A stretch of DNA of 64,000 nt from Botryllus schlosseri (lineage: Eukaryota): NCBI GenBank assembly GCA_051294905.1, contig CM119378.1:14508001-14572000 (forward strand), written 5' to 3'. Numbering within the stretch: the stretch's first letter is position 1; the number at the start of each line of letters is the position of its first letter. The translations under genes and the position numbers were made by a program. The notes beneath the pieces are model-generated. The model was not told the origin of the DNA and did not search any database. It saw only the letters and a list, made by a program, of their open reading frames with translations. Shown one piece after another: positions 9,291 to 53,370 of the stretch.

Positions 9291-9660
9291 CGACTAAGAT
9301 TACGATTGCAACAAAACCTCTAAATAATCGATTATTATTACGATTACACGGTGAAGTAATCAGGATTACTCAAGAACACATTTGTTTTGGAAGGCATTAT
9401 AACGACTGAGATTGCTTAAATGCCGCATGATGAGAGAACAATTGTCTTCATAAATGTTACGTCCACTTCTCGATGCGCCACAATATACACATTGCACAAC
9501 TTCATAGCTGACGATTCAACCAAACATCCAACATCGATAATAACAATACTACAGTATTCTAATCGAGGAAGGGTCAACAATATATTGGTTGTGTGTTGAT
9601 GACCATGACGCGGCGGAGGTTCTCTCAATCATGTTACTACAATACACTACATGTAGAAAC

Positions 9661-10921
9661 CAGAGGTGGTCAGTAACGAAGTACTTCTACTTTTTCGAAG
9701 TACTCAAGTAGTTTTCCTCTACTTCTGGTACTTACTCAAGTAGATCTGATTTTCGCTACTTCTACTTCTACTTCGTAATATTTTGTGATCTACTTACTTA
9801 CTTTTCGCTATTTTCAGTTTGTCAAGTAGAAGTAGTTAAATCCACCACTCAGGAAGATAGCCTAAGGAATTTCGGGGCTGTTTTCACGGAGTATCAACAT
9901 TTAATTTTCATAAAAGTTGAGTATAGCCCACAATTTTCGTCGCGCTTCGCGCGCAGTGGATACGGAGTAACCAGTAGAATTTCACGATTGTATCGGTGAA
10001 TATAATTTAGGTAGCGTTGGCGTGGTTCCGTTCACACCAAATTGTCGCCCTTCGCTATATCAAATATTTCATCACAGTATATACGGCTCATCATACCGTT
10101 TGAAACTGATGTTTCGCAATCTAGCACTTACTCATCATATCGTAATCTAGCATGTCCATGGCGTGTCCTAATCTCGAAAAGTGTTATAGCATACCACTTT
10201 CTTGACTAAAGACATGAAATACATGTTCCGCTTTTAGAAGTAGTATTTATATTTCACTTTCAATTCCCAGTATCATATGCTTTGAGTTCTAATTAATATC
10301 AGTTCTTTCGTCTCGATACCATACATGTTGAAGCATAAAAGCAAGTGTAGTAATGCCCTTAATTTCCGGAAATAAAGACACAATATGGCATTTTTAAGGT
10401 CCACCCTATTTTTTATTACCGTTTACTAATCGCGCAAAATGTTTACACCGTATCTTATACAACTTCTCCGAATTGCTCTTCGACTAAACTACGGGCCTTA
10501 TAATGTGGGGGAGGGCGCCATTCCATGATATTTTCTAAAACATACTGTTCGAGAAAACAGAGATTTAGTATCGCCTTTCCAAACCAATACTATCATTTCC
10601 ATCCCATGATGCCGACGAATGCTTAATTGCTTATGCTGTCGAAAATTGGATACATCCTGGTATGCATCAATATGAATCAAGCTCGGCACCTTTCGTACTG
10701 CTCAATTTGTACCTTTTTGACAATATATGTGAACAAATTAGGATCGTTTTCAAAACTACTTACTTACTTGAGTAGATTTAAAGTCAGTCAATTCTACTTC
10801 TACTTGAAGTAGTTTTAGGTTGCTTATGGAAGAAGTACTTTTACTCGTACTTGAGTAGATTTTTTCGTCGCTACTTCTACTTCTACTTGAGTAGCTTTCT
10901 TGACTACTTTGACCACCTCTG
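9661..10921. mobile_element. Complete hAT MITE with ACTTCT/AGTAGA subterminal arrays (family E)
   Basis: TIR CAGAGGTGGTCA / TGACCACCTCTG; perfect 8-bp TSD GTAGAAAC. Confidence 0.95.
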
Positions 10922-10949
10922 GTAGAAACTAGGAAGTCAGCGAATTGTG

Positions 10950-16402: not shown

Positions 16403-19400
16403 CTGTCCAAATAAAATGGCAATGTACAGAACATGCTTAAAAACGGGGTTGACACTGCGACCTACAATAACTCTATATTATTACCATATTCAATAAAAGC
16501 TGTCCTAGTGAACGAGAATCGTACCGCAGAGGTGGTCAGTAACGAAGTACTTCTACTTTTTGGAAGTACTCAAGTAGTTTTCCTCTACTTCTGCTACTTA
16601 GTCAAGTAGATCTGATTTTCTCTACTTCTACTTCTACTTCGTAATATTTTGTGATCTACTTACTTACTTTTCGTTATTTTCAGTTTGTCAAGTAGAAGTA
16701 TTTTAATCCCCTAATACGGAAGATAGCCTGAGGAATTTCGGGGCTGTTTTCACGAAGTACCAACATTTAATATTCATAAAAGTCAAGTAAAGCCCAGAAA
16801 TTTTGTTGCGCTTCGCGCACAGTAGTTATGGAGTGACAAATATGTTGTCACGAAAGTATCAGTGAATATAATTTAGGTACCGGATTGCTTGGTTCCGTTC
16901 ACACCGCATTGTCGCCCATATCAAATATTTCATCACAGTAAATAAGGCCCACCATAACGTTTGAAACTACCGTTTTTCAATATAGAAATTACATATCGTA
17001 TCTTAATCTAACAGCCCATGACGTGTCCAGCTAATCTGGAAAATCCGGCATTTTTGAACGCTACACCTGATTGAGCAGATCACCTTTGAAGCTTTATGGA
17101 CAAAAGACATGAAATTTATTTTCCGCTTTTTAGAAGTGGTATTAGTATTTCACATTCAATTCCGAGTATCATACTTTGAGTTCTAATTATACGTTCAGTT
17201 CTTTTGTCTGCAGAACATATATTGAAGCATAAACGCAACCGTAGTACTGCCTCTATTTTCCGAAAATGAAGTTACACTAAGTATAAATTTTACGATCCAC
17301 AATATTTGTTATTAACGTATACTAATCGCGCAAAGTGTTGAAACCGTATCCGATACAACTTCCCCGTATTGCTCTTCGCCAAAACTTGGGGCCTTATCAT
17401 ATGGGGTCGGGCACCCTGTCATGATGTTCTCTAAAACGCAGTATTCTACTAAACAAAAGCTTAGTATCGCATTTTCATATCAATACTATAATTTGCATCC
17501 CATGATGCGAAAGAATGCTTATTCTGTCGAAAATTGATATCTCATGGGATGCATCAATACGAATCAAGCTCTCTGCACGTTCCACATAGCTCAATTTGCA
17601 GCTTTTGACAGTCCATGCGAACGAATTAAGACTGTTCTCAAAACTACTTACTTACTTGAGTAGATTTAAATTCGGTCAATTCTACTTCTACTTCAAGTAG
17701 TTTCAGGTTGCTTATGGAATAAGTACTTCTACTTGTACTTGAGTAGATTTTTCCGTCGCTACTTCTACTTCTACTTGAGTAGCTTCCTTGACTACTTTGA
17801 CCACCTCTGATCGTACGACGAATCGAATTCGAGATGAGTGAAATCTTTTGTGCTTGCAAGTTTGTTGTTGACTATATTTGTTTGGCGTTAGCACGGACAG
17901 ATTTTGTTCAAGATATATATAATCCAATTTTCTAAGACCATATATATTGATATCGAGCGACTATCTACAATTAGTGTGATCTTATCACTTGTCAGCACAA
18001 AGACAAACCGTCTGGAAGTGCATACGAGTATAGCGTTATGATCCAGTCAACGACTTTGCGGCGAACCAACCAAACCATACAAACAAACAAACACCAAATT
18101 AAACACCCTGTTACGACTATACGGGTCGTATGTACCAGGGTGGTTAAATTCCAAGTTGTATATAAACTACGGTTACGGAGAGGTCTGAAGCGTCACTGAT
18201 ACGATCTCGCAGACGAGATAAGTTTCGCTATTGAAGTTTGTGTCGAAACATAATAACGCATACATCGCATATCTATTCATCATGTGCAAATTGCTTGAAT
18301 CTATACCTTTCTAGGACGAGCTGAAGAGCTACAAGGTCGGATAATGCAAAGACGAGTCTCTTTTGTCATCCTGCAGTCCCTGTTATCGTTTGTCACGCGT
18401 TCGCTCACGCCGTAGTTGCACGTCTTCGAGCACGGGGACCAGGGTGTCGTTTGGACGACACACGAACCTCGCAATGTAAGCGACTCCTTCTGCGGCACTG
18501 AGAATTGAAAGGACGAAAGTAAGCATTGAGTAAAGGCGGACCCTTCGGGGTCAGGGGTTTGTTATTCCTCACAAATTCTATTTCGAAATTCCGGCCAGTT
18601 TTTGTTTCTCGGAGTGATTTATTCGTCCGACTTCTGATATTAAGTCAACATGTATAAATACAGTAGCCTGGAATGCAGTAAAAAACTATTCATTAGCGCT
18701 TCCGCCACTAAAAATTGTCCGTCACAATGACATGTCAAGATTATTCCCAAGCCCATAATATGTATAACTGTATACCGCCTTCCTACCATACGTTGTGATA
18801 AGTCTTGTGTTTATTTTATTTGATGACTCTGGTGCACGACTATGTCGGAAATAACACAATCGCTAAGCCCCAAACGCGTGTCACAATAGCGCGGAATTTC
18901 TCCACCCCAAATTCTGCATTGTTTTCGTTTATTCAGTCCCACTAATCCGCCAAACATCTTATCTACATCACACCCCCATAACAAACATGCGCCCAGAACA
19001 CTAAAATGACCCATCTTATTACAACGCCCATTTACCGAGGAATTTTCGTGCGCTGTTGACAGATGTACTTAGTGACAGGATTGTGGGTTGGCTGCAATTT
19101 AATTTGAAATTGCAATTCTATTTATCTTATTATTAAGGGATTTTTTCGCGGTATCAGCGAGTGGCATATCCTTAAAACGTATTTCAGATACTTAGCTACT
19201 CGTCAGTGATGCTATATACTTCACTAACAAAGGCTGTTAGTACGATATTTTTAAGATGGGCCAACTCCTACTCTTCACTCTAATGACGAGGCCATCGACA
19301 TCATGTTCAACGCTATCGTGGTATCTTCTAAAATTCAAGCATGCAATTCAGATTAGTTCTTCCGACCACTGATAATATGGTAACTTGATCTGGCTCTGAC

Positions 19401-36424: not shown

Positions 36425-38620
36425 TGATAGATAGATAGATCATTTATTAAATTCGTCTCACCAGGAAAATTTGAAACATTCAAATAATCGGTATATGGAC
36501 AGGGGAGGGACGATACGACCGAGAGGTCATCTAGTCAATCCCTTCCCTATAGAGCATACAAATTATAACTCACGAGACAGACGAACACAATGATAAATTT
36601 CAAAAACACAAAAATAAAAGAGATGGGTATAAACGAACAACATACACATAAGAAAGCCATGTTCGAACAGCAACAACAACAGTGCATCAATTACAGACCA
36701 ATAGGTTGATTAGAAGGGTCCAGCAGATAGTCTATCAGTGATTTTTTAAGACCGTTGAAGCTTCGTTCACGAATTGTAATGGGTACATTATTCCAGATGA
36801 TAGGACCGGCTATCAAAAGAGATCGTTTGCAGAATTCCTTCCTTACTAAATTGTGGCGGTAATTTGGTGCGGCTGAAAATCTGGTATTGTGACTATGGGT
36901 GGATGTTGATAGTTGTAATTCATCCTCCAAACTAAAGTCAAGCTGTTTATTGTAAAAACGATACATGAATTTAGCTACTTCCAGATATTTAATTTCTTCA
37001 ACTCTCAATATTCTCCACTCCCGATATGACTTCCCAAGATTACATCGAAATGACCCCGTAAGGTCACGAATGGCGTTGTTTTGAATCACCTGTATTGGAT
37101 GCAAAGTAGTTTTGTTGCAGAAGCCCCAACTCAAAATTCCATATTGCAAGTGACTGTGAACCATTGCAAAATACACTTCTCGGAGCACCGTCTTCGGAAC
37201 TAGATGTCTAAGGCGCCGTGAGATGCCAACACCACGGGAGAGTTTAACCGCTAGCTTCTGGGTATGGTCCTTCCAGGATAGATCGCCATCAATGAATATG
37301 CAACCTTAGAAGGGTTTATCGTCTTATCATTTACCATTACACTAACAGTGCGATATTCTTTAGTACTTATGACGTTACTAATGAATATAATCTGGGTTTC
37401 GGCAGCATTCAGCGTTAATTTATTACACATCATCCATTTGGATACCAAAGTCATTTCCCTATTAAGCTTCGCATTGAGCTCATCAACGTAATCTGATGAG
37501 GCGAAGAGGTGCGTGTCATCAGCAAATAGGGTGGTTTCCATCGATGTGGATTTAGCTAGGTCGTTGATATAAATCAAGAACAATGTCGGACCAAGAACAG
37601 ACCCTTGAGGGACACCGCATCGTATGGCGCCAGGCGACGAGTTGATGCCACCGATATCGACACATTGAGATCTATTGCTCAAGTAAGATCTGAAAAGGTC
37701 ATTGGCAACACCCCTGATACCGCAGGCCGATAACTTGGCAAGAAGGATTTCATGATCAACGGTATCAAACGCTTTCTTGAGATCAAGGAATATACTGCAT
37801 GCCACTTTGTTTCGCTCAATTACCTTATAGTATTTCTCCGTCACATCGAGAATTGCCTGGGAGGTATTGAATCCTTCCCGAAAACCAAATTGCTGTTTCG
37901 ACTGTTCAATAACTCGTCAATGGCATTCTTGAAAGCATCGAAGTATGCTTCAAAATTGCTCAAGGTTAAGGGTTTGTCAAATAATGTAGAGAACACATAT
38001 TGAGATTCGGTTGCTAAACGGGAAGGATCAATACCATCGAGGTCACGTTTATAATAACGCAAGGGTTTACATTTGCTAGTTCTCAAATCAACTATCGCAA
38101 AAACAGGCAAGTGGTCAGATATTACATATGGGCACACACACGGTTGGATTTCCCGGGTGGATAAATTCGTGTAAATATGGTCAAGAAGAGTACTAGAACT
38201 GTCCGAATACCTAGTCGGTTGGGAAATTAATGGTACGAAGTTACAGCATCGTAACATATTGATATATCGGTTCACAGTCGGGCTATTTTTTGCTTTGAGG
38301 TTAACATTAAGATCTCCAATGATGAAACAATCGTTCGACTTTTCGTTGATTTTACACAAGGCTCGATTCCTTTCTTCTGTGAATTCGGTGACATCATCCA
38401 CGCTAGATCTAGGGTGTCTATATATGATCGCAATGATTAGGGACTTGTTATGCTGGAAATCTTCCAAATTGACCCATAGCTGCTCACAGTCTCGATACGC
38501 AAGATTATAGGCCGTTAGCACAGTGAATCGCAGATTAGATTTGATATAGAGGCCTACCCCGCCCGCATTGGAACGGGTCGGTGAGTGCAGGAACGTATAT
38601 CCATCCAATGCTATATTAGA
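36425..38620 (-). mobile_element. CR1-group (L2/Crack-like) LINE: ORF2 pseudogene with APE endonuclease, RT and C-terminus
   Basis: EN: GGVGLYIK, IYRHP, IIGDLNVNL, LLDHIYTN, SDHLPVF. RT: FLDLKKAFDTVDH, GVPQGSVLGPTLFLIYINDL, FADDT. C-term: YFAMVHSHLQYGILSWG, GPIIWNNVP. Frameshifts, an internal deletion, (ATCT)n tail. Confidence 0.95.
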
Positions 38621-44149: not shown

Positions 44150-44410
44150 TTAGCTAGTAATTGAATAGTATATTCATATTGAAATGAGCCCGAATATTTT
44201 CGGCTGACACTCGTCAGGGGTAATCGTCGGCAACTAGTAGAGAATTGGAAAGAATATTGTATATCAACGATCGTATCACAAAATATGACGTCACCAGCAT
44301 GAAATTTCGAGTGAGAGAGCGTTCAATGTACTATTTTAGGTGGTACACGAAGTTCTTTTGTGGACAGAGTTTTGGTCGGTGTATTTTGATAAAAGTCGAC
44401 TTCAAGGCAC
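44150..44410. repeat. Dispersed repeat, inverted partner of 50860-51120
   Basis: High-identity reverse complement of 50860-51120; partial third copy at 40768-40835. Confidence 0.88.
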
Positions 44411-44714
44411 AGCACACAAGCACACAAGCTAGCTACATGGTTATGTCGGCATTGGTCTTCTATGGGTCCCTCCGAAAAGGTGTCCCATCCCGGAGTTATC
44501 GATATTCCTGGAGTGTGAGAGCAAAAGTTGATACCGGAAAATGTTATTGAATGGAGTTGCACTATACGCGTTGGCGAAAATTGGTAAAATACAAGGTTTG
44601 GGTTTAGACGGATAACTTAATCGAATGACCGCAAATCCTGTAGGCTTTATCTTGTTTACCAATCGAAAACCAAATTCAGATAATAATAGCAACATGGCGG
44701 AAGATCGTTCAACG

Positions 44715-45038
44715 TCATTCACCACCATCACCGCATCCTCCTCCATCTCCATCACCGCATCCTCCTCCATCTCCGCCACCGCATCCTCCTCCACCACCGA
44801 ATCCTCCTCCACCACTGCATCCTCCTCCATCTCCACCACCGAATCCCCCTCCACTACTGCATCCTCCTACATCCCAACTACCACCGGGATTGCCTCCGTC
44901 ACACACATACCCTCCGCCAAAGCCTCCTCTATGTCCGTCGTAGCAGCCTCCTCCATCATATCCGCCATAATTGTTGGATAATGTGCACGGTGTCCTGTGT
45001 ATAGGCGGCGCTGATGCTTTGGTTGTTGTAGTCTTGAC
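44715..45038 (-). CDS. Mini-gene last exon: SAPP repeat plus Gly/Cys/Asp-rich tail
   Basis: cattcttcag|GTC; VKTTTTKASAPPIHRTPCTLSNNYGGYDGGGC...GGGDGGGCGDGGE*. Confidence 0.78.
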   Translation of the reverse strand, partial: VKTTTTKASAPPIHRTPCTLSNNYGGYDGGGCYDGHRGGFGGGYVCDGGNPGGSWDVGGCSSGGGFGGGDGGGCSGGGGFGGGGGCGGGDGGGCGDGDGGGCGDGGE

Positions 45039-48000
45039 CTGAAGAATGTGAGAAGTCAAAACTATTTCGAAAGATCCCTGATAGCAAACTTCGATGCATT
45101 GCCGAGGCGTAATTGGAGAAAGTTCGACCACAGAGGCCAAATAGATACTTAGCCTTGTGCAGGATATCTTTGGATCCGGATTTTAACATTTGAGACGGAA
45201 ACAGGATACGGATTCCATTTTATCTAACAGGATTGAACCCGGACCCCCAAAGTACCATGATACCTACATCTCTAGCGTACGGTGCCATGTGGATAGGCGG
45301 CGCTGATGCTCTGGTCGTTGTGGTCTTGAGCTGAAAAATGTGAGAAGTCAAAACAACTCTATACATCGAATTTAATTGCAACTACACCAATGCCAAATTT
45401 GAACATATGCACATGGAGGGGTACATCCTAATGGGCCATGGATTGAATAAGGGGCTTTAACGGAAATGATTCTCGTCTGGTTTTGGTTTCATTCCACATT
45501 CCATCATTCCACAATTCGTCATTTTCGGCATTGCCGAAAGACTGTGGAAGGTTCTTCATCAGGATTTTTTTTGAAACGAATGCGACCCTGCCAAATTTTT
45601 ATCTTAGCGATGCGGTGCACCCATATATATATATATATTGAACATGATTTTGGTTTCATCATATTGCTCAACGTCACGTCGGCCTATCCCATATACAGTT
45701 AGCGACCCCAACCCTGAGATATAAAAAGACAGCAGTAGAAATTTCTATCACGAAATGATATCTAACGCTACTTCAGTATTTGTAACCAGCAGGGTTTCAT
45801 GTCCAACTGTAACATGCCTATAGATGCTCATGGTTTATGTAACTTGTGCGCCTGAGCAATGAGCAGTCGCACAATATTTACTAGCTGAAGTATTGTTCTA
45901 ACTAAAATTCCATCGATACCAAAAAACTGCCCGTACCGTGCTTCCTGCAGTTCTTCCACTCTTCGGAGTCTGAAAGAAACAATATTTCTCATGTCCGACA
46001 GAAAGTAACTACGTCATTAAAACTCACCCCAAGTGCCCACCAACAGCAAGCGGCGATAATGAATAGTAGAATGATAACACCCAGTTGCACACACGCAATA
46101 AATCCAGCACCAGCTGAAAAACGAATATTATAATCAGTACCGTTCAGTTACTAGTCGGGAGCGTGAGGTTCAGTGTTGGTGAAGAACTGGCCCCTATAGT
46201 CAATGTTTTCAATATATGCACCCAAAAGGGTAGTTTAGCTTGAAACTTGTTATTTCATATCGCATGAGCAATGAGTATTCATTACACACATACACACACG
46301 TAAGGCACTTAATATCACGCTGTGTACGTAAGAAGGTATACTACATATCCAGTGTCCCTAATTGATGGTAGGTATGAATAATACATAACAGCTTCATAAG
46401 TAAGTAATTGCTACATGAGTATTTTCTCTGCAATACATATTGGTCGTCGCAACCTTCACACTATACACTGTCGGTTCGAGATGCCGATAACCGATAACTC
46501 ATTGTTTCACGGCGCTGCGTTGGTAGATAGTATAAATGCAAACGTTTTTTATGAGCTGATTGAGGAGACTATCATGAGTGACTTGATGTGCCCAGAAATT
46601 GCGTACATGAATCACCCAACCGCTACATGAATTATATTTATTTATACTTTCGTGGAAAGAAATTGGTTATTCCATATTTATTCTGCGCTGGGCATAATGA
46701 AAATTCTGGACTCTCCGCGAAAAAATAGCCTTAATTTCTCCGACTTGGTCTCTCTCACCCTCTCTCTCTCACTGTGAAGTAGAAGTAGAAGAGTAAGTGA
46801 CGTAAAATTAGATTTGCTTGAGTATAAGTAGTAAGTACTGCAAATAGACGAAAACTATTTGATTACCTCGAAAAAGTGAAAGTAGTTACTGATTGTATCC
46901 GAGTACTTCTACTGTTTCGAAGTATTCAAGTGAGGTTTGTCTAGTTCCATTACCTATTCATTTCACCGAAAATTCAACAATTTCTGAATCCCTTTTTATA
47001 TTTTACATTTTCGATTTTGTGTAATAACCACATGAATTCGTATCACTACCATGCGTGAAATTACGTTGAGAGCTGAGCGATAATGGAGAGAGCCCGTATG
47101 ACGGCATCTGATTAAATTTCCAAAATCGCGCTTCTTGCAGTCGCGATATAGCCACTCGGCTCGGCACGAAGACGCCCATATGGTATTCTCACATTCCTTG
47201 AGCCCCGCTACTTGTACTGATGTACTGTACGTACACCAGGGGTGGGCAAAGTAGTCAAGAGAGCTACTAAAGTAGAAGTAGCGACGCAAAAATCTAGTCA
47301 AGTACGGGTAGGAGTAGTAGTTTTAAAAGCAGCTTACAACTACTTGAAGTAGAAGTAGAAATGACTGACCTTAAATCTACTCAAGTAAGTAAGTACTCGT
47401 GAAAATGATCGTTATTCGTTCTTATAGATATAGACTGTCAAAAGCTGCAAATTGAGCTATGCGAAAGGTACAGAGCTTGATTCATATTGATGAATCCCAG
47501 CAGGTATAGACTTTTGACAGCATTATCATTCGTACGGATCGTGGGATGAAAGTGAAAGCATTGACAAGGGAATGCGATACTCATACTCTGTTTACTCGAA
47601 CACCTCTGGTATGGCACCCTCTCCCATATCATAAGGCCCGTAGGCCCGAAATTCCTCAGGCTATCCTTCTGGTTGGAGGATTAAACTACTTCTACTTGTT
47701 AAACTGAGAATAGCGAAAAGTAAGTAAGTAGATCACAAAATATCACGACGTAGAAGTATAAGTAGCTAAAAATTGGATCTACTTGAGTAAGTACCCAAGT
47801 AGCGGAAAACTACCTGAGTTCTTCAAAAAGTGGAAGTACTTCGTTACTGACCTCTCTGCTGTGTACATTATTTGAGTATCATCAATAGCAACTTTGTCTA
47901 TACATCTGCTCATTAGTCATACGAGATAATAATGTGTCAGCGCCGGCGCCGGGACCTACGATCACTTGGGCCCCAGTTGCTACTTTTGGCAAATGAGAAG

Positions 48001-49657
48001 ACCAGATATATGCTCAATGCTCACCCGTCGACGGAGTTGCGACGGTAGTCGTCCTCGTAGTAGTATCAAGAGTATCGTAGTGGCCCTGAAAGTACATTTT
48101 GATATAACATGATGACCTCTCATCCATATAAACACTGTACATTTGGGAGAGAAAGTAGTGGGCCTATCCTCTCGGTTTCTGGAAACTCTTGCTGTTGGAT
48201 CTAGCTGGGATCTGGGATTGCTTTATCGTGATTGCGTTTACTATCGTTACCCCAAATCATATATCGGGTTTTCAATTTATTTAAATGCTCATGCCCAGGC
48301 CGGTTAAGGTTGAATTTAAAACTAAAACCAATGTAAAACATAAAATGAAATTAAAAAAAGATTAAAACATACATGTTTTAAACAGGGCACTTGTTTAAAT
48401 CATGTTCTTTATTGTTTTTGGTTAGTCATGACGTCATCAATATGTTATTGTGACGTCACAGTGGGTTGACATTGAAAATATAGGGTAAATATGGCACCTT
48501 TGACGAATAATGCTTCCGAGCCCTGTCATAAACGGACAAAAAATATGTTTAACCAGGACTATATCGGTATGCAGCATTTTTACGGTCGGCGGTCATCATC
48601 GTCAGGACATTCATTCTTGACCAATAATCCTTCTGTTGAGCCGACAACGATTTCCAGGGTTTTAACCATTCTATATTGTATACGTCGACCATAGATCGGG
48701 AGCAAATCGACCGTAGGCTCATACTATACATGTCTTTTTCCAAAGTATTTGCACAATTGCGGCATAATTATACAACTTTTGAAGAAAAAAATCACAAATT
48801 TTCGTAAAAGGCATTTTTTTAGAAACAATGTTTAAAAAATGTTTTAAACAAAGTGTTTTAAAGCAGCATTTGTTTTAAATGCAACCCGAAGGCCGGTATA
48901 ACTAATTCTACTAACACATCGAGTGGTGGTTATAAAGGATTAGAAAATCAGTTGACGACGAGAAAGGAAAGGTTTTGCTTGTATTGACATGAAACTATAT
49001 GCATGCAATGCACCCGCCCGGCACGTTTATACGTGTACGTAACGTAATTACTATTACGCAACCTGTTATTTTCAGTTTCGGGAGAGCGACGAGATAATAA
49101 CACGTGACTCGTGTGGTTCTCCGGTATAATGTATATCATAGCAGTGCGAAGGATTGTGCTGCTAATGGTAGCTTAAATTACTGCAGCAGGACGTATACTT
49201 TTGCGGCGTGATAGCTGTGCTGTGCTAATAATATATAAGGTATCCAAATACATGAAGGTATGTAATACGATATCTGGCATCAGCAGTTCCCGTATCCAGC
49301 TTTTCCTATACATGTTTATGGCTCTTCGTATCATTTCCTTCCGTTATTTTTACTGTAATTTTAACCAAGGGAGAGTTTGATTGATGGATATCACCAAGGA
49401 ATTTCGACTCGTTTTCATATTTTCATTCAGTCGCAATTAATGTGGTATTTGGAATCGACGAAATGTCTAATACACGATCGCACCTGTAAGTCGTTGACTC
49501 CCAAAACTTTTTCGGCGAATTCTTCCACCTTTTTCGATAATTTATCCGCGCTCTGTTTCGATTCTGTTTTCCAGTCTTGAGCTCTGACTCGATCAATAGA
49601 GAGACTCGATATCCCGATAAATATAATTAATTTTAGCGCGCTTCCCATGACAAACAT
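44715..49657 (-). CDS. Small single-pass membrane protein with a CACHD1/alpha2delta-like N-terminus and Gly/Cys-rich tail, 6 coding exons, ~246 aa
   Basis: join(49657-49484, 48085-48025, 46113-46028, 45969-45937, 45330-45268, 45038-44715). All GT-AG, phases 0,1,0,0,0 give one open frame: signal peptide, ADKLSKKVEEFAEKVLGVNDLQ|GHYDTL, Thr-rich stalk, TM (LGVIILLFIIAACCWW), two ASAPPIH repeats, Gly-rich tail. Confidence 0.78.
45268..45330 (-). CDS. Mini-gene coding exon 5 (LKTTTTRASAPPIHMAPYARD)
   Basis: catttttcag|CTC ... GAT|GTAGGT; near-duplicate of the start of the last exon. Confidence 0.72.
45937..45969 (-). CDS. Mini-gene coding exon 4 (33 nt, TPKSGRTAGST)
   Basis: tttctttcag|ACT ... 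ACG|GTACGG; preceded by a 58-nt intron. Confidence 0.72.
46028..46113 (-). CDS. Mini-gene coding exon 3: transmembrane helix
   Basis: GAGFIACVQLGVIILLFIIAACCWWALG; cgtttttcag|CT ... GGG|GTGAGT. Confidence 0.82.
47237..47858. mobile_element. Internally deleted family E MITE (reverse) in a mini-gene intron
   Basis: CAGGGGTGGGCAAAGTAGTCAAG ... GTACTTCGTTACTGACCTCTCTG; a related fragment lies at 46770-46930. Confidence 0.85.
48025..48085 (-). CDS. Mini-gene coding exon 2: GHYDTLDTTTRTTTVATPST(A)
   Basis: tactttcag|GGC ... G|GTGAGC; phase 0 in, phase 1 out. Confidence 0.72.
48300..48897. mobile_element. MITE-like element in a mini-gene intron
   Basis: Imperfect TIR CCGG..GGTTGAATTTAAAAC / GTTTTAAATGCAACC..GGCCGG; two TGACGTCA at 48429 and 48451. 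Confidence 0.5.
49484..49657 (-). CDS. Mini-gene coding exon 1: signal peptide plus CACHD1/alpha2delta-like helix
   Basis: MFVMGSALKLIIFIGISSLSIDRVRAQDWKTESKQSADKLSKKVEEFAEKVLGVNDLQ; acceptor cattttatag immediately before the ATG; donor CAG|GTGCGA. Confidence 0.8.
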
Positions 49658-50157
49658 CTATAAAATGCGAAGTTTGCAAATAGGTCACAAAAGTGACGAC
49701 AGCGACGTAAGTGTGTAATTGAAAGTTTTAAGGCAATTCACAAGTCTACAGTAAAGTTTGAGGTACGTTGTTTTTCATACGTCAAATAGCTCGGTGTTCT
49801 TGAAATATTATACCAACCAAAGCAGGCTTTTCTCTAAAAATAAAATAAAAGTCCGAATATGATCATAACAAAACTACGAAGTATAGATATTGTCAAGCAC
49901 TTGTGAGATATGCAAAGTAATATATTCATATAATATTGTATTTATCAAACTGTACACCATGGTTAATAAATATGGATTGTAAAAATTGATGGACACAGCC
50001 GCCTAATTTTTACATATTCTTATTTCGACACCTTAAAACACTGCAGCGGGGCCTACGACTGCAGGTATCAGTAAATGACATTTGTAGCGGTCGCTGCAAC
50101 GGCTTGTTGCAAGACACGCTGGTATAGTGCTTGATTGGAGTCGACGCTACAGCTTAC

Positions 50158-50859: not shown

Positions 50860-51120
50860 GTGTGCCTTGGAATCAACTTTTATCAAAATACACCAACCAA
50901 AACTCTGTCAACAAAAGGAGTTCGTGTATCACCTAAAAATAGTACATTGAACGTTCTCTCATTCGAAATTTCATGCTGGTGACGTCATATTTTGTGATAC
51001 GACTGTTGATATACAATGTTCTTTCCAATTCTCTACTAGTTGCTGACGATTACCCCTGACGAGTGTCAGCCGAAAATATTCGGGTTCATTTCAATTTGAA
51101 TATACTATTTAATTGTATAT
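50860..51120. repeat. Dispersed repeat, inverted partner of 44150-44410
   Basis: Contains GACGATTACCCCTGACGAGTGTCAGCCGAAAATATTCGGGTTCATTTC, the reverse complement of ~44180-44230. Confidence 0.88.
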
Positions 51121-51465: not shown

Positions 51466-51814
51466 NNNNNNNNNNNNNNNNNNNNNNNNNNNNNNNNNNN
51501 NNNNNNNNNNNNNNNNNNNNNNNNNNNNNNNNNNNNNNNNNNNNNNNNNNNNNNNNNNNNNNNNNNNNNNNNNNNNNNNNNNNNNNNNNNNNNNNNNNNN
51601 NNNNNNNNNNNNNNNNNNNNNNNNNNNNNNNNNNNNNNNNNNNNNNNNNNNNNNNNNNNNNNNNNNNNNNNNNNNNNNNNNNNNNNNNNNNNNNNNNNNN
51701 NNNNNNNNNNNNNNNNNNNNNNNNNNNNNNNNNNNNNNNNNNNNNNNNNNNNNNNNNNNNNNNNNNNNNNNNNNNNNNNNNNNNNNNNNNNNNNNNNNNN
51801 NNNNNNNNNNNNNN
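51466..51814. other. Assembly gap (349 N)
   Basis: Run of N. Confidence 1.
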
Positions 51815-53370
51815 CTTTGCTATATGCTTACGTTGATGAGCTTTTACGAAGGTGTGTCTCGCTATTGTTTTTCATTTCATTTCGAAATTTTCATGACAGA
51901 ATTTTTATGTTGTTGCAAGCCGTCTTTGTGAAATCAAAATATGTTTTAACTAGGCCCTATAGACCGCCTTCATTTATAGCCACGAGGCTGGAGAAATCAC
52001 CAATCATCGCAGTCAGCGTCATGTTGCTCATCACATAACGTATAAAGTTAAGGTTGCGTGTGAATATCATAACGTGATTAATATTATCTACGCCAGGCAT
52101 TACGGTGATTTCTCCAGGGTTCTCGGCAACTGACTTCATTGTTGTGAATGTTGGAATTCGCAGTTCTTTCGACCAAAAATCTTCTGTGACAAAATCTGCG
52201 CCAATTTCCAGTTTGAATATCTCGATTGTCGAGTCTTTAAGGGAAAAATACATAAAATTCTCAGGATGAAAGATCAACCAGAGCAACTACATTTCTCTGA
52301 GAGTCGTGTAACGTAAGATGAAATCAGCCTGCCGAACGAGACCGTAAAATTTTCGATTTCGAAAAATCATCAATTGTGCATGTGATTCTGTAGTATCGAC
52401 TCCGTTACGATCATTATTGGCACGAGAGTCATTATCTGCGATAACCGTCACGTTCCGATGACGTTGTGTTGCGAGGACCGAAATAAAATTCTCGAGAAAA
52501 CGGATATCAAAAATGTGTTATATTATTATTATTTTCTTTATTCACAGTAAAATTGGTAAATACGCACATAATCCGGGTAGTAACCTGCCCCGTCCAACCT
52601 GTCCAAGCCTACAAACAGTTTCCGTTGCCACCATTGTCACAGTCCAAGATCGGCGTAAACTTACGCCTGGCTACGTTAATATCGAAGGATGACCATCCCG
52701 TCTTCGCGAAACAAATCACCGAAGAAGTCATACCGCACGAGCAGTCAACGGGTAGCATCAGAATTTATACTGATAGCTCGAAAACCACACCAGGGTGTGG
52801 GTCGAGTTTCTTCGTGGAGAACAGAGACGTATGTTCCGGTTGTACGCTTGACGGTCACTTATCCGTCCTCTCGACAGAGTCGATTGCCATCCGGAATAGT
52901 TTTAATTGGGTTGAACGCAATGGTATACGCCAGAAAGTCGTGTGGTTATTTTTTCAGGCAGCCAGAGCAATCTAGTGGGGATCCGAAACTGCTCTCCAGA
53001 CGACAAAATCATCGCCGATATCCACCTCCTATAGGATCCGAAATACATGCAATAGAGATCAAACTGGTTTTGGTCTTGATCCCAGCCATAAGGGCATCCG
53101 CGGCAACGAAAAAGCTGATGAAACCGCAAGGAGAGCAGCCCTGAGGCCACTTGCACGTGATGAAACCCTCCAGCAAAAAATAACTATGAAGGAGATGAAA
53201 CCCCACATTACCGATATATATCGGGAAAAGTGGATCGATCACACGAATGCCAATGACGACGACTCGCAATGTAGAAAAATTATTGAAGTTATTAGGGACA
53301 TTAACAATCATTAATTTGTCATGCAGAGAAACCGGAATTCTAATTAGATTGCAGACTGGTCGTTCTAGGC

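What the first reader, a model, noticed from the sequence alone, without database searches (positions are those of the whole stretch)
44715..49657. 'Mini-CACHD1/alpha2delta': a small membrane protein that keeps only the first helix of the VWA-Cache scaffold
Seen in sequence: six GT-AG exons splice in frame into a protein of about 246 aa with a signal peptide, ADKLSKKVEEFAEKVLGVNDLQ|GHYDTL, a Thr-rich stalk, a TM helix with juxtamembrane CC, and a cytoplasmic tail. Established (sequences recalled from memory, to be verified): CACHD1 begins EAQVLASQMRRLAAEELGVVTMQ|RIFNSF and alpha2delta-1 has TASGVNQL. The segment aligns without gaps to CACHD1, with the same hydrophobic register, and the phase-0 intron after LQ appears to match the intron I recall after MQ in CACHD1. 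The TM exon (AGFIACVQLGV) also resembles CACHD1's AGGIMGCIMV. Only about 1.9 kb, largely MITE, separates exon 2 from the TM exon, with no N gap, so the roughly 1000-aa VWA/Cache core cannot be there. Inference: an internally deleted or exon-shuffled CACHD1-like paralog, a new architecture that could act as a decoy or helix-swapping modulator, or be repurposed as a structural surface protein.
Basis: partly seen in the sequence, partly recalled or inferred. Interest (0 to 1): 0.85.

Follow-up and report, generated by a model that had tools for sequence, protein, structure and literature searches.

The report
Small membrane protein with CACHD1-derived head
This is a real, spliced and transcribed gene for a 246-residue single-pass membrane protein whose signal peptide and first helix come from the first two exons of a CACHD1-like Wnt/calcium-channel accessory gene, while the roughly 1000-residue VWA/Cache body is absent; what it does is untested.

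Summary
Six GT-AG exons on the minus strand (49657 to 44715) join in frame into 246 codons. The product has a signal peptide, an amphipathic helix, a Thr-rich stalk, a TM segment with a CC pair, and a Gly/Cys/Asp-rich tail. Transcript contigs from two runs support all five junctions.

Exon 1 gives no Pfam or PDB hit to CACHD1 or alpha2delta, alone or as a profile, and the Pfam VWA_N model appears to begin downstream of this helix.

The support comes from an exhaustive phmmer search. It found a 51%-identical exon-1 homolog (E 3e-5 against 1.84 billion proteins) in contig L002. In L002 that exon has the same phase-0 intron after LQ. A 63-nt exon follows, opening DYYDTL (here 61 nt, GHYDTL). Then come exons that match VWA_N, VWA and, in the PDB, only CACHD1 (8S7C).

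No VWA or Cache relic exists anywhere in the 64-kb window. A collinear locus in a close relative (L001) shows dN/dS of about 0.3 on exon 1.

Most likely this is a chimeric or truncated derivative of a CACHD1-like gene. Function, the origin of the TM and tail exons, and whether a full-length parent persists in this genome remain open. Interest is moderate.

The parts
49484..49657 (-). Exon 1 (58 codons). It encodes the signal peptide (1-26, predicted cleavage after V-R-A) and an amphipathic helix (27-58) ending in LGVNDLQ. The donor is GT in phase 0.
   Evidence: sequence and frame. (contigs 49493-49659 and joint 48085|49484). (P0001 81% identical, P0003 51% identical). (23 invariant columns). 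(hydrophobic moment in the top 2% of shuffles). (AF2 gives a single helix, pLDDT about 80 over residues 31-50).
48086..49483 (-). Intron 1 (1398 nt). Parts are collinear with the L001 locus of a close relative, and it holds a repeat at about 48568-48955.
48025..48085 (-). Exon 2 (61 nt). It opens GHYDTL, then runs into a Thr-rich stalk, and ends in phase 1. Its counterpart is the 63-nt second exon of the CACHD1-like gene in L002, which opens DYYDTL.
46114..48024 (-). Intron 2 (1911 nt, no N). Interspersed-repeat copies lie at 47230-47868 and 46620-46892. There is no VWA_N, VWA or Cache relic.
46028..46113 (-). Exon 3, the transmembrane segment (about residues 80-106) with CC and WW at its cytoplasmic end.
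   Evidence: loose ends at 48025 and 46114; joint 45969|46028.
45937..45969 (-). Exon 4 (11 codons), a basic juxtamembrane stretch (TPKSGRTAGST).
45268..45330 (-). Exon 5 (21 codons, LKTTTTRASAPPIH...). It is a tandem duplicate of the 5' part of exon 6, including the acceptor region.
   Evidence: 76 nt at 89% identity, spacing 292 nt.
44715..45038 (-). Exon 6 (107 codons plus stop). It holds the second TTTT-x-ASAPPIH motif, then a tail in which 49 of 86 residues are Gly, with 7 Cys and 9 Asp. The tail is encoded by an 18/24-nt coding minisatellite.
   Evidence: No Pfam family and no homolog.
44500..44714 (-). 3' UTR (approximate), covered by transcript contigs. It runs into a high-copy repeat at 44300-44493.
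   Evidence: depth table; X1 record 1 spans 44583-45036..

Best explanation
This is a transcribed, lineage-restricted gene that arose when the 5' end of a CACHD1-like gene became joined to a transmembrane exon and low-complexity tail exons. The retained 5' end is exon 1 (signal peptide plus the first amphipathic helix of the N-terminal helical region) and exon 2. The join happened either by partial duplication and exon shuffling or by an internal deletion. The product is a 246-residue type I membrane protein. After signal-peptide cleavage (predicted after V-R-A) it would display a helix of about 32 residues on a short Thr-rich, probably O-glycosylated stalk. A TM helix with two candidate palmitoylation cysteines follows, then a cytoplasmic tail of about 140 residues rich in Gly, Cys and Asp. 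Shown here: the gene model, its splicing, the homology of exons 1-2 to the first exons of a CACHD1-like gene, and the absence of the VWA/Cache body. Inferred: the helix keeps its conserved hydrophobic seam (A37, L40, V44, F47, V51) although its intramolecular packing partner is gone. The most likely way it works is therefore as a membrane-tethered interaction helix, like a 'microProtein'. It could self-associate, or it could dock on whatever normally contacts this helix in CACHD1-like proteins.
For: The six exons are in frame with canonical splice sites. All five junctions appear in transcript contigs of two runs. phmmer of exon 1 against 1.84e9 proteins found only two real relatives. P0001 is 81% identical and lies in locus L001. 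P0003 is 51% identical (E 3.1e-5) and lies in L002. In L002 the homologous exon ends at the same LQ|GT phase-0 intron. After 258 nt comes a 63-nt exon opening DYYDTL (ours: 61 nt, GHYDTL). Further exons follow on the same strand: one starts with ATG but has no signal peptide, then come exons matching Pfam VWA_N (8e-5) and VWA_2 (7e-7). In the PDB these match only CACHD1 8S7C (5e-7 and 1.6e-4). No core exon relic exists in the gene or in the 64-kb window. L001 is collinear over about 3 kb. Exon 1 there is 88% identical against 77-81% for the flanks. dN/dS is 0.30 overall and 0.19 for the helix, and all four helix replacements are conservative. The helix is amphipathic and AF2 predicts it as helical. 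[quoted passage not shown]
Against: The link to CACHD1 rests on a single contig (L002). It also rests on the inference, without RNA evidence, that L002 exons 1-2 are spliced to its VWA_N/VWA exons. L002 exon 3 itself gives no Pfam or PDB hit. Exon 1 shows no direct significant similarity to vertebrate CACHD1 or alpha2delta. The TM and tail exons have no detectable relative, so their origin is unknown. The constraint estimate rests on 21 substitutions in one exon, and L001 ends before exon 2, so its architecture is unknown. The two coding differences seen in transcripts are both non-synonymous (R176K, L119P). Expression is low or restricted. Nothing shows that this particular helix is one of the LRP6-contacting helices, or that a single helix would bind anything.
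Confidence: 0.7

Rival explanations
1. This is a transcribed evolutionary leftover. A partial duplicate or broken copy of a CACHD1-like gene keeps its promoter and first exons, and they splice to fortuitous downstream exons. The open frame is young and the protein has no selected function.
For: The gene sits in a gene-poor, repeat-rich region with a LINE fragment at 36.7-38.6 kb. The tail is a coding minisatellite with no homolog, and exon 5 is a recent duplicate. No reads were found in two bulk RNA runs. Both coding differences seen are non-synonymous.
Against: There are six in-frame exons with a coherent topology: signal peptide, stalk, TM, then basic residues on the inside. dN/dS on exon 1 is about 0.3, and exon 1 is more conserved than its flanks. 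The indel polymorphism seen in the tail is in frame (+3 nt at 44790). The hydrophobic seam of the helix is invariant even against the distant L002 sequence.
Confidence: 0.2
2. This is an orphan small membrane protein unrelated to CACHD1. On this reading the exon-1-like ORF in L002 belongs to a separate small gene that merely lies upstream of a CACHD1-like gene.
For: There is no direct Pfam or PDB similarity of exon 1 to CACHD1 or alpha2delta. L002 exon 3 begins with ATG. No RNA evidence exists for L002.
Against: The L002 CACHD1-like exons lack a signal peptide of their own, and exon 3 is preceded by an acceptor AG in the right phase. L002 exons 1 and 2 are both phase 0-0, and no TM or tail exon is visible in the 950 nt between exons 2 and 3. 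If neighbours were random among about 2e4 genes, the chance would be of order 1e-4 (my estimate).
Confidence: 0.1
3. This is a short alternative isoform of a full-length CACHD1-like gene whose core exons lie more than 44 kb downstream, outside the window.
For: The window ends 44.7 kb downstream of the gene, so distant exons cannot be excluded. TE-rich genomes can have long introns.
Against: No VWA_N or VWA relic exists anywhere in the window. Exon 2 here ends in phase 1, whereas the L002 counterpart ends in phase 0, so it would not join a phase-0 core exon. The transcript contigs show only the exon 2 to TM-exon junction. Introns of the L002 gene are 0.06-1 kb.
Confidence: 0.05

Closest known systems
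CACHD1 (VWFA and cache domain-containing protein 1; mouse ectodomain structure PDB 8S7C/9EQ6)
   Same: Both are type I membrane proteins with an N-terminal signal peptide followed directly by an amphipathic helix. Through the L002 intermediate, exon 1 and the start of exon 2 are homologous, with the same phase-0 intron.
   Different: It lacks the rest of the N-terminal helical region, the VWA domain, both dCache domains and the FZD-interaction domain, about 1000 residues in all. Its ectodomain is about 52 residues. The tail is an unrelated low-complexity sequence. There is no direct significant sequence match to the vertebrate protein.
Voltage-gated calcium channel alpha2delta subunits (CACNA2D1-4)
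   Same: They share the wider VWA_N-VWA-Cache superfamily with the inferred parent gene.
   Different: The L002 parent-like gene hits only CACHD1 in the PDB, not alpha2delta chains. Alpha2delta proteins are GPI-anchored or cleaved (my own knowledge). This protein has a true TM segment and none of their domains.
MicroProteins: small single-interaction-domain proteins derived from larger multidomain proteins, such as Id proteins and plant LITTLE ZIPPER (from my own knowledge, not checked here)
   Same: It is a small protein derived from a large one that keeps only one potential protein-protein interaction element. That element could titrate partners of the parent family.
   Different: Known microProteins are mostly soluble regulators of transcription factors. 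This one would be membrane-tethered and extracellular, and no interaction has been shown.
Chimeric new genes formed by partial duplication or exon shuffling
   Same: The 5' exons (and probably the promoter) of a parent gene are fused to unrelated 3' exons. There is a recent internal exon duplication and a minisatellite coding tail.
   Different: The donor of the 3' part was not identified, and the parent copy in this genome was not seen.

Membership tests
CACHD1 / alpha2delta (VWA_N-VWA-dCache) family | VWA domain (with or without an intact MIDAS motif) | tested here: not met
   There is no Pfam VWA hit in the exons or in intron ORFs. tBLASTn with the L002 VWA exons against the whole window gave only chance hits (E>=2). 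Transcripts join exon 2 directly to the TM exon.
CACHD1 / alpha2delta (VWA_N-VWA-dCache) family | Pfam VWA_N region (helices plus the WQYF-type motif preceding the VWA domain) | tested here: not met
   There is no VWA_N hit at E<=10 for exon 1. No relic of the WQYF exon exists in the window. Caveat: the model appears to start downstream of the retained helix (inferred).
CACHD1 / alpha2delta (VWA_N-VWA-dCache) family | Double Cache domains | tested here: not met
   The 52-residue ectodomain leaves no room for them. No Pfam hit was found in the ten longest minus-strand stop-free segments that lie in introns 1-3.
CACHD1 / alpha2delta (VWA_N-VWA-dCache) family | Signal peptide followed by the first N-terminal helix, encoded by exon 1 with a phase-0 intron after ...LQ | tested here: met
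   Exon 1 is 51% identical to exon 1 of the CACHD1-like gene in L002 (E 3.1e-5 against 1.84e9 proteins) and the intron position is the same. The next exon opens (G/D)(H/Y)YDTL in both. Whether L002 exon 1 belongs to the CACHD1-like transcript is inferred, not shown.
CACHD1 / alpha2delta (VWA_N-VWA-dCache) family | C-terminal TM helix homologous to that of CACHD1 | not testable with these tools
   A TM segment is predicted. No CACHD1-like TM sequence could be fetched: the L002 contig ends in the VWA domain and the PDB entry is ectodomain only.
Chimeric gene from partial duplication or exon shuffling | A parent-derived block with conserved exon boundaries joined to a non-parental block | tested here: inconclusive
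   The parent-derived 5' block is shown. The 3' block has no homolog, so 'non-parental' cannot be told apart from 'diverged CACHD1 C-terminus'.
Chimeric gene from partial duplication or exon shuffling | The parent gene is still present elsewhere in the same genome | not testable with these tools
   Only this window of the genome was available. Earlier notes of the scan mention no CACHD1-like gene.
Chimeric gene from partial duplication or exon shuffling | Transcribed and correctly spliced | tested here: met
   All five junctions are present in the contigs of runs X1 and X2.

The most novel reading that the evidence does not exclude
This is a natural membrane-tethered 'microProtein' of the Wnt and calcium-channel accessory family. 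The retained helix would be one of the two N-terminal dCache helices with which CACHD1 contacts the LRP6 P3 propeller. Displayed alone on a mucin-like stalk, it would bind an LRP5/6-type propeller or a full-length CACHD1-like protein, and so tune Wnt co-receptor availability in the cells that express it.
Probability: 0.07. Interest if true: 0.7.

Novelty: new variant of a known kind. Interest (0 to 1): 0.42.

Why it matters
If the origin holds, this is a clean natural example of a very large extracellular scaffold reduced to a single surface-displayed helix, and that helix is still under some constraint. It gives an experiment that nature has already set up on what the N-terminal helix of CACHD1-type proteins can do on its own. 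In the mouse structure that region is part of the LRP6-binding face. It also shows that Pfam VWA_N does not cover the first helix of the family, so genes like this one escape domain-based annotation. If the protein turns out to be inert, it is still a documented case of new-gene birth by 5'-exon capture, which is an ordinary process.

Tried and rejected
- Pfam on exon 1 and exon 6 at E<=10 gave nothing.
- phmmer of exon 1 against the PDB, and a profile of three exon-1 sequences against the PDB, gave no CACHD1 or alpha2delta hit. The best hit was the YWTD-propeller motif of LRP4 (DW.T.S.QSAD.L). Its E of 0.044 comes from four summed weak repeats and worsens to 0.73 with the profile, so I treat it as chance.
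- The ESM Atlas feature search on exon 1 scored 0.75 or less, with no informative cluster.
- P0002 is a 1081-aa tandem-repeat ORF that matched in 17 weak stretches (E 4e-19). I rejected it as repeat-inflated statistics.
- The word-indexed homolog searches found no relatives: with exon 1, with P0001 residues 1-58 to reach proteins of 106-338 aa (it returned only P0001 itself), and with the exon-6 ORF. All three searches are now used.
- A metagenome scan with the exon-1 alignment gave nothing. A scan with a CACHD1 exon alignment gave only vertebrate-type CACHD1 exon contigs L003-L005, which lack the upstream exons.
- tBLASTx of L002 against the window showed no synteny beyond exon 1.
- I considered a frameshift origin for the Thr-rich half of exon 2, because an alternative frame reads YYYEDDYRRNSVDG. 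The match to L002 is only E 2.6 and in a different register, so I dropped it.
- The full-length spliced protein has no reference form, so it was not submitted to the search or folding tools. The supplement of the CACHD1 structure paper held no interface residues.


Full report
**1. What is in the sequence**

On the minus strand, six exons are each bounded by a pyrimidine-rich AG acceptor and a GT donor. They are 49657-49484, 48085-48025, 46113-46028, 45969-45937, 45330-45268 and 45038-44715. Together they make a 741-nt reading frame of 246 codons plus a stop.

The product has these parts:
- a hydrophobic N-terminus (residues 1-26, ending V-R-A);
- a charged amphipathic stretch (27-58) ending LGVNDLQ exactly at the phase-0 intron;
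- GHYDTL followed by a Thr-rich stretch (59-79);
- a strongly hydrophobic segment (about 80-106) ending CCWW;
- a basic juxtamembrane piece;
- two copies of a TTTT-x-ASAPPIH motif;
- an 86-residue tail with 49 Gly, 9 Asp and 7 Cys.

The only N run in the window is 51466-51814, outside the gene.

Exon 5 is a tandem duplicate of the start of exon 6, acceptor included (76 nt at 89% identity). The tail is encoded by an 18/24-nt coding repeat.

**2. Is it transcribed and spliced that way?**

Yes. Contigs from two runs of one 2015 study (X1, X2) carry joints 45038|45268, 45330|45937 (with an A>G difference that gives L119P), 45969|46028 and 48085|49484.

The exon 2 to exon 3 junction is shown from both sides by loose ends. 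Twelve letters before 48025 equal the start of exon 3, and 17 letters behind 46114 equal the end of exon 2.

Exon depth is 15-50, against 0-8 for the unique parts of the introns. Two bulk RNA runs read at 6-13% gave no exon reads, so expression is low or restricted.

No transcript evidence places any further exon between exon 2 and the TM exon.

**3. Is the missing body hidden nearby?**

No. tBLASTn with the VWA_N and VWA exons of the CACHD1-like gene in L002 gave only chance-level hits across the 64-kb window (E>=0.4). The ten longest minus-strand stop-free segments lying in introns 1-3 gave no Pfam family of that kind.

About half of intron 2 is interspersed repeat. Other copies lie in the window at 9.65-10.9 kb and 16.5-17.8 kb, and contig depth there is very high. 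I found no terminal inverted repeats, so 'MITE' is unverified.

The neighbourhood is gene-poor and repeat-rich, with a LINE endonuclease/reverse-transcriptase fragment at 36.7-38.6 kb.

**4.

Exon 1 gives no Pfam family at E<=10. It gives no CACHD1 or alpha2delta chain in the PDB at E<=10, either alone or as a three-sequence profile. CACHD1 (8S7C) is in that PDB copy, so the silence is real.

However, the WQYF-type motif of the L002 gene aligned to positions 96-127 of the 128-position VWA_N model. Counting back, the model starts at about the second or third exon. The first helix therefore lies outside it. This is my inference from the coordinates.

A 30-residue helix at about 30% identity is also below what phmmer can report.

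**5. The decisive evidence came from an unbiased search**

phmmer of the 58 exon-1 residues against 1.84 billion representatives returned three proteins.
- P0002 is a tandem-repeat ORF whose score is the sum of 17 copies of one weak match. I discard it.
- P0001 (81% identical) and P0003 (51% identical, E 3.1e-5) are exon-1 ORFs called on shotgun contigs. Both end at ...LQ followed by GT, which is the same intron position.

L001 (P0001) is collinear with the window over about 3 kb of upstream sequence and intron 1. It ends about 50 nt short of where exon 2 should be. It is the orthologous locus of a close relative, or a recent duplicate. Exon 1 is 88% identical against 77-81% for the flanks. 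dN/dS is 0.30 (9 synonymous and 12 non-synonymous changes). For the mature helix it is 0.19, with only conservative replacements.

L002 (P0003) is the informative one. The exon-1 homolog lies at 10001-10153. Downstream on the same strand lie:
- a 63-nt phase-0 exon opening DYYDTL (ours: 61 nt, GHYDTL);
- an exon that starts with ATG behind an acceptor AG but has no signal peptide;
- an exon matching Pfam VWA_N (E 8e-5);
- an exon matching VWA_2 (E 7e-7) with an intact D-x-S-x-S motif.

Against the PDB, the VWA_N and VWA_2 exons hit only CACHD1: 8S7C chain positions 173-228 (E 5e-7) and 228-288 (E 1.6e-4). They hit no alpha2delta chain.

So the nearest relative of our exon 1 outside its own lineage sits where the signal-peptide exon of a CACHD1-like gene must be. 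An independent search then landed beside a CACHD1-like gene, which chance does not plausibly explain.

The weak point is that no RNA evidence shows the L002 exons 1-2 spliced to its core exons. In addition, L002 exon 3 itself has no Pfam or PDB match.

**6. What the retained piece looks like**

Across the three exon-1 sequences, 23 columns are invariant. They include AQDW at the predicted cleavage site and the seam A37, L40, V44, F47, V51-L52-G53.

The mature segment has a helical hydrophobic moment in the top 2% of shuffles. AlphaFold2 models it as one helix, with pLDDT about 80 over residues 31-50.

In mouse CACHD1 the crystallised ectodomain starts at D50 (bioRxiv 10.1101/2022.05.16.492129). 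[quoted passage not shown] Whether the retained helix is one of those two could not be checked here.

**7. Most likely explanation**

The gene is a chimeric or truncated derivative of a CACHD1-like gene. It keeps the 5' two exons and joins them to a TM exon and a low-complexity tail. It encodes a small type I membrane protein that displays one amphipathic helix on a short Thr-rich stalk.

I put about 0.7 on this origin together with a real, expressed gene. Given that origin, I lean towards the helix being the working part, because of its conserved seam and low dN/dS. It would act through protein-protein contact, as a microProtein does. This step is inference only.

The rivals are:
- a transcribed but functionless relic (0.2, and compatible with the same origin);
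- an orphan gene with coincidental adjacency in L002 (0.1);
- a short isoform of a gene whose core lies beyond the window (0.05).

**8. Membership and novelty**

The gene fails every defining domain test of the CACHD1/alpha2delta family: VWA, VWA_N as modelled, and dCache. It should not be filed as a member. It is a derivative that shares only the first exon pair.

I found no description of a natural CACHD1 derivative of this kind. A literature search on CACHD1 with 'truncated' listed nothing relevant by title or abstract among the ten best-ranked of 39 papers.

Partial-duplication chimeras are a well-known kind of event. I therefore rate it a new variant of a known kind, of moderate interest. 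The interest would rise sharply only if an interaction with an LRP5/6-type propeller or with CACHD1-like proteins were shown.

**9. Limits**

The full-length spliced protein could not be handed to the search or folding tools, because it has no reference form. Only this window of the genome was available. All homolog-search quotas were used without finding relatives of the TM or tail part. Earlier notes of the scan contain nothing on this locus or on a CACHD1-like gene in this genome.

Noticed in passing
window 36691-38608 (minus strand): Three consecutive ORFs form a degraded LINE: Exo_endo_phos endonuclease (E 6e-8) and RVT_1 reverse transcriptase (E 6e-21).
   Followed up: partly
window 47230-47868 and 46620-46892; other copies at about 9651-10923 and 16523-17817: An interspersed repeat family has at least three copies in the window at 71-87% identity. 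RNA-contig depth over the intron-2 copy is in the thousands. No terminal inverted repeats were detected.
   Followed up: partly
window 44300-44411 and 50861-50973: A 113-nt repeat at 90% identity, in inverted orientation, flanks the gene on both sides, just beyond the 3' UTR and about 1.2 kb upstream of the start codon. Contig depth over it is very high.
   Followed up: no
window 49520-49590 (exon 1 residues 21-44): The N-terminus (DWKTESKQSADKL) resembles the recurring YWTD-propeller motif of LRP4 (DWQTKSIQSADRL). The E of 0.044 comes from four summed weak repeats and weakens to 0.73 with a profile. It is probably chance, but curious because CACHD1 binds an LRP6 propeller.
   Followed up: partly
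window 44790, 44929, 45329: Transcript contigs differ from the assembly by an in-frame 3-nt insertion in the Gly-rich tail and by two non-synonymous changes (R176K, L119P). A second 3'-UTR haplotype carries six differences within 44518-44582.
   Followed up: partly
L002:3375-3938 (minus strand): A cytochrome P450 fragment lies upstream of the CACHD1-like gene in L002. It has no counterpart in the window, so no synteny was detectable.
   Followed up: partly
L002:11980-11994: The CACHD1-like gene of L002 has an intact D-x-S-x-S MIDAS-type motif (VIDKSAS). The mouse CACHD1 chain shows ILDHGAS at the aligned position.
   Followed up: no
L003, L004, L005 (metagenome contigs): Three metagenome contigs carry an exon almost identical to the mouse CACHD1 chain in the PDB, presumably vertebrate host DNA in the samples. 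They were not used further.
   Followed up: no
P0002 (1081 aa, from the representatives library): This ORF is the translation of a tandem repeat of about 61 residues. It reached E 4e-19 against a 58-residue query purely by summing 17 weak matches, which is a caution for repeat-inflated phmmer scores.
   Followed up: partly
window 52553-52975 (plus strand): An ORF has an RNase H-like motif (IYTDSSK...GCG) in a GC-richer stretch, probably another retroelement fragment. It was not checked against Pfam.
   Followed up: no
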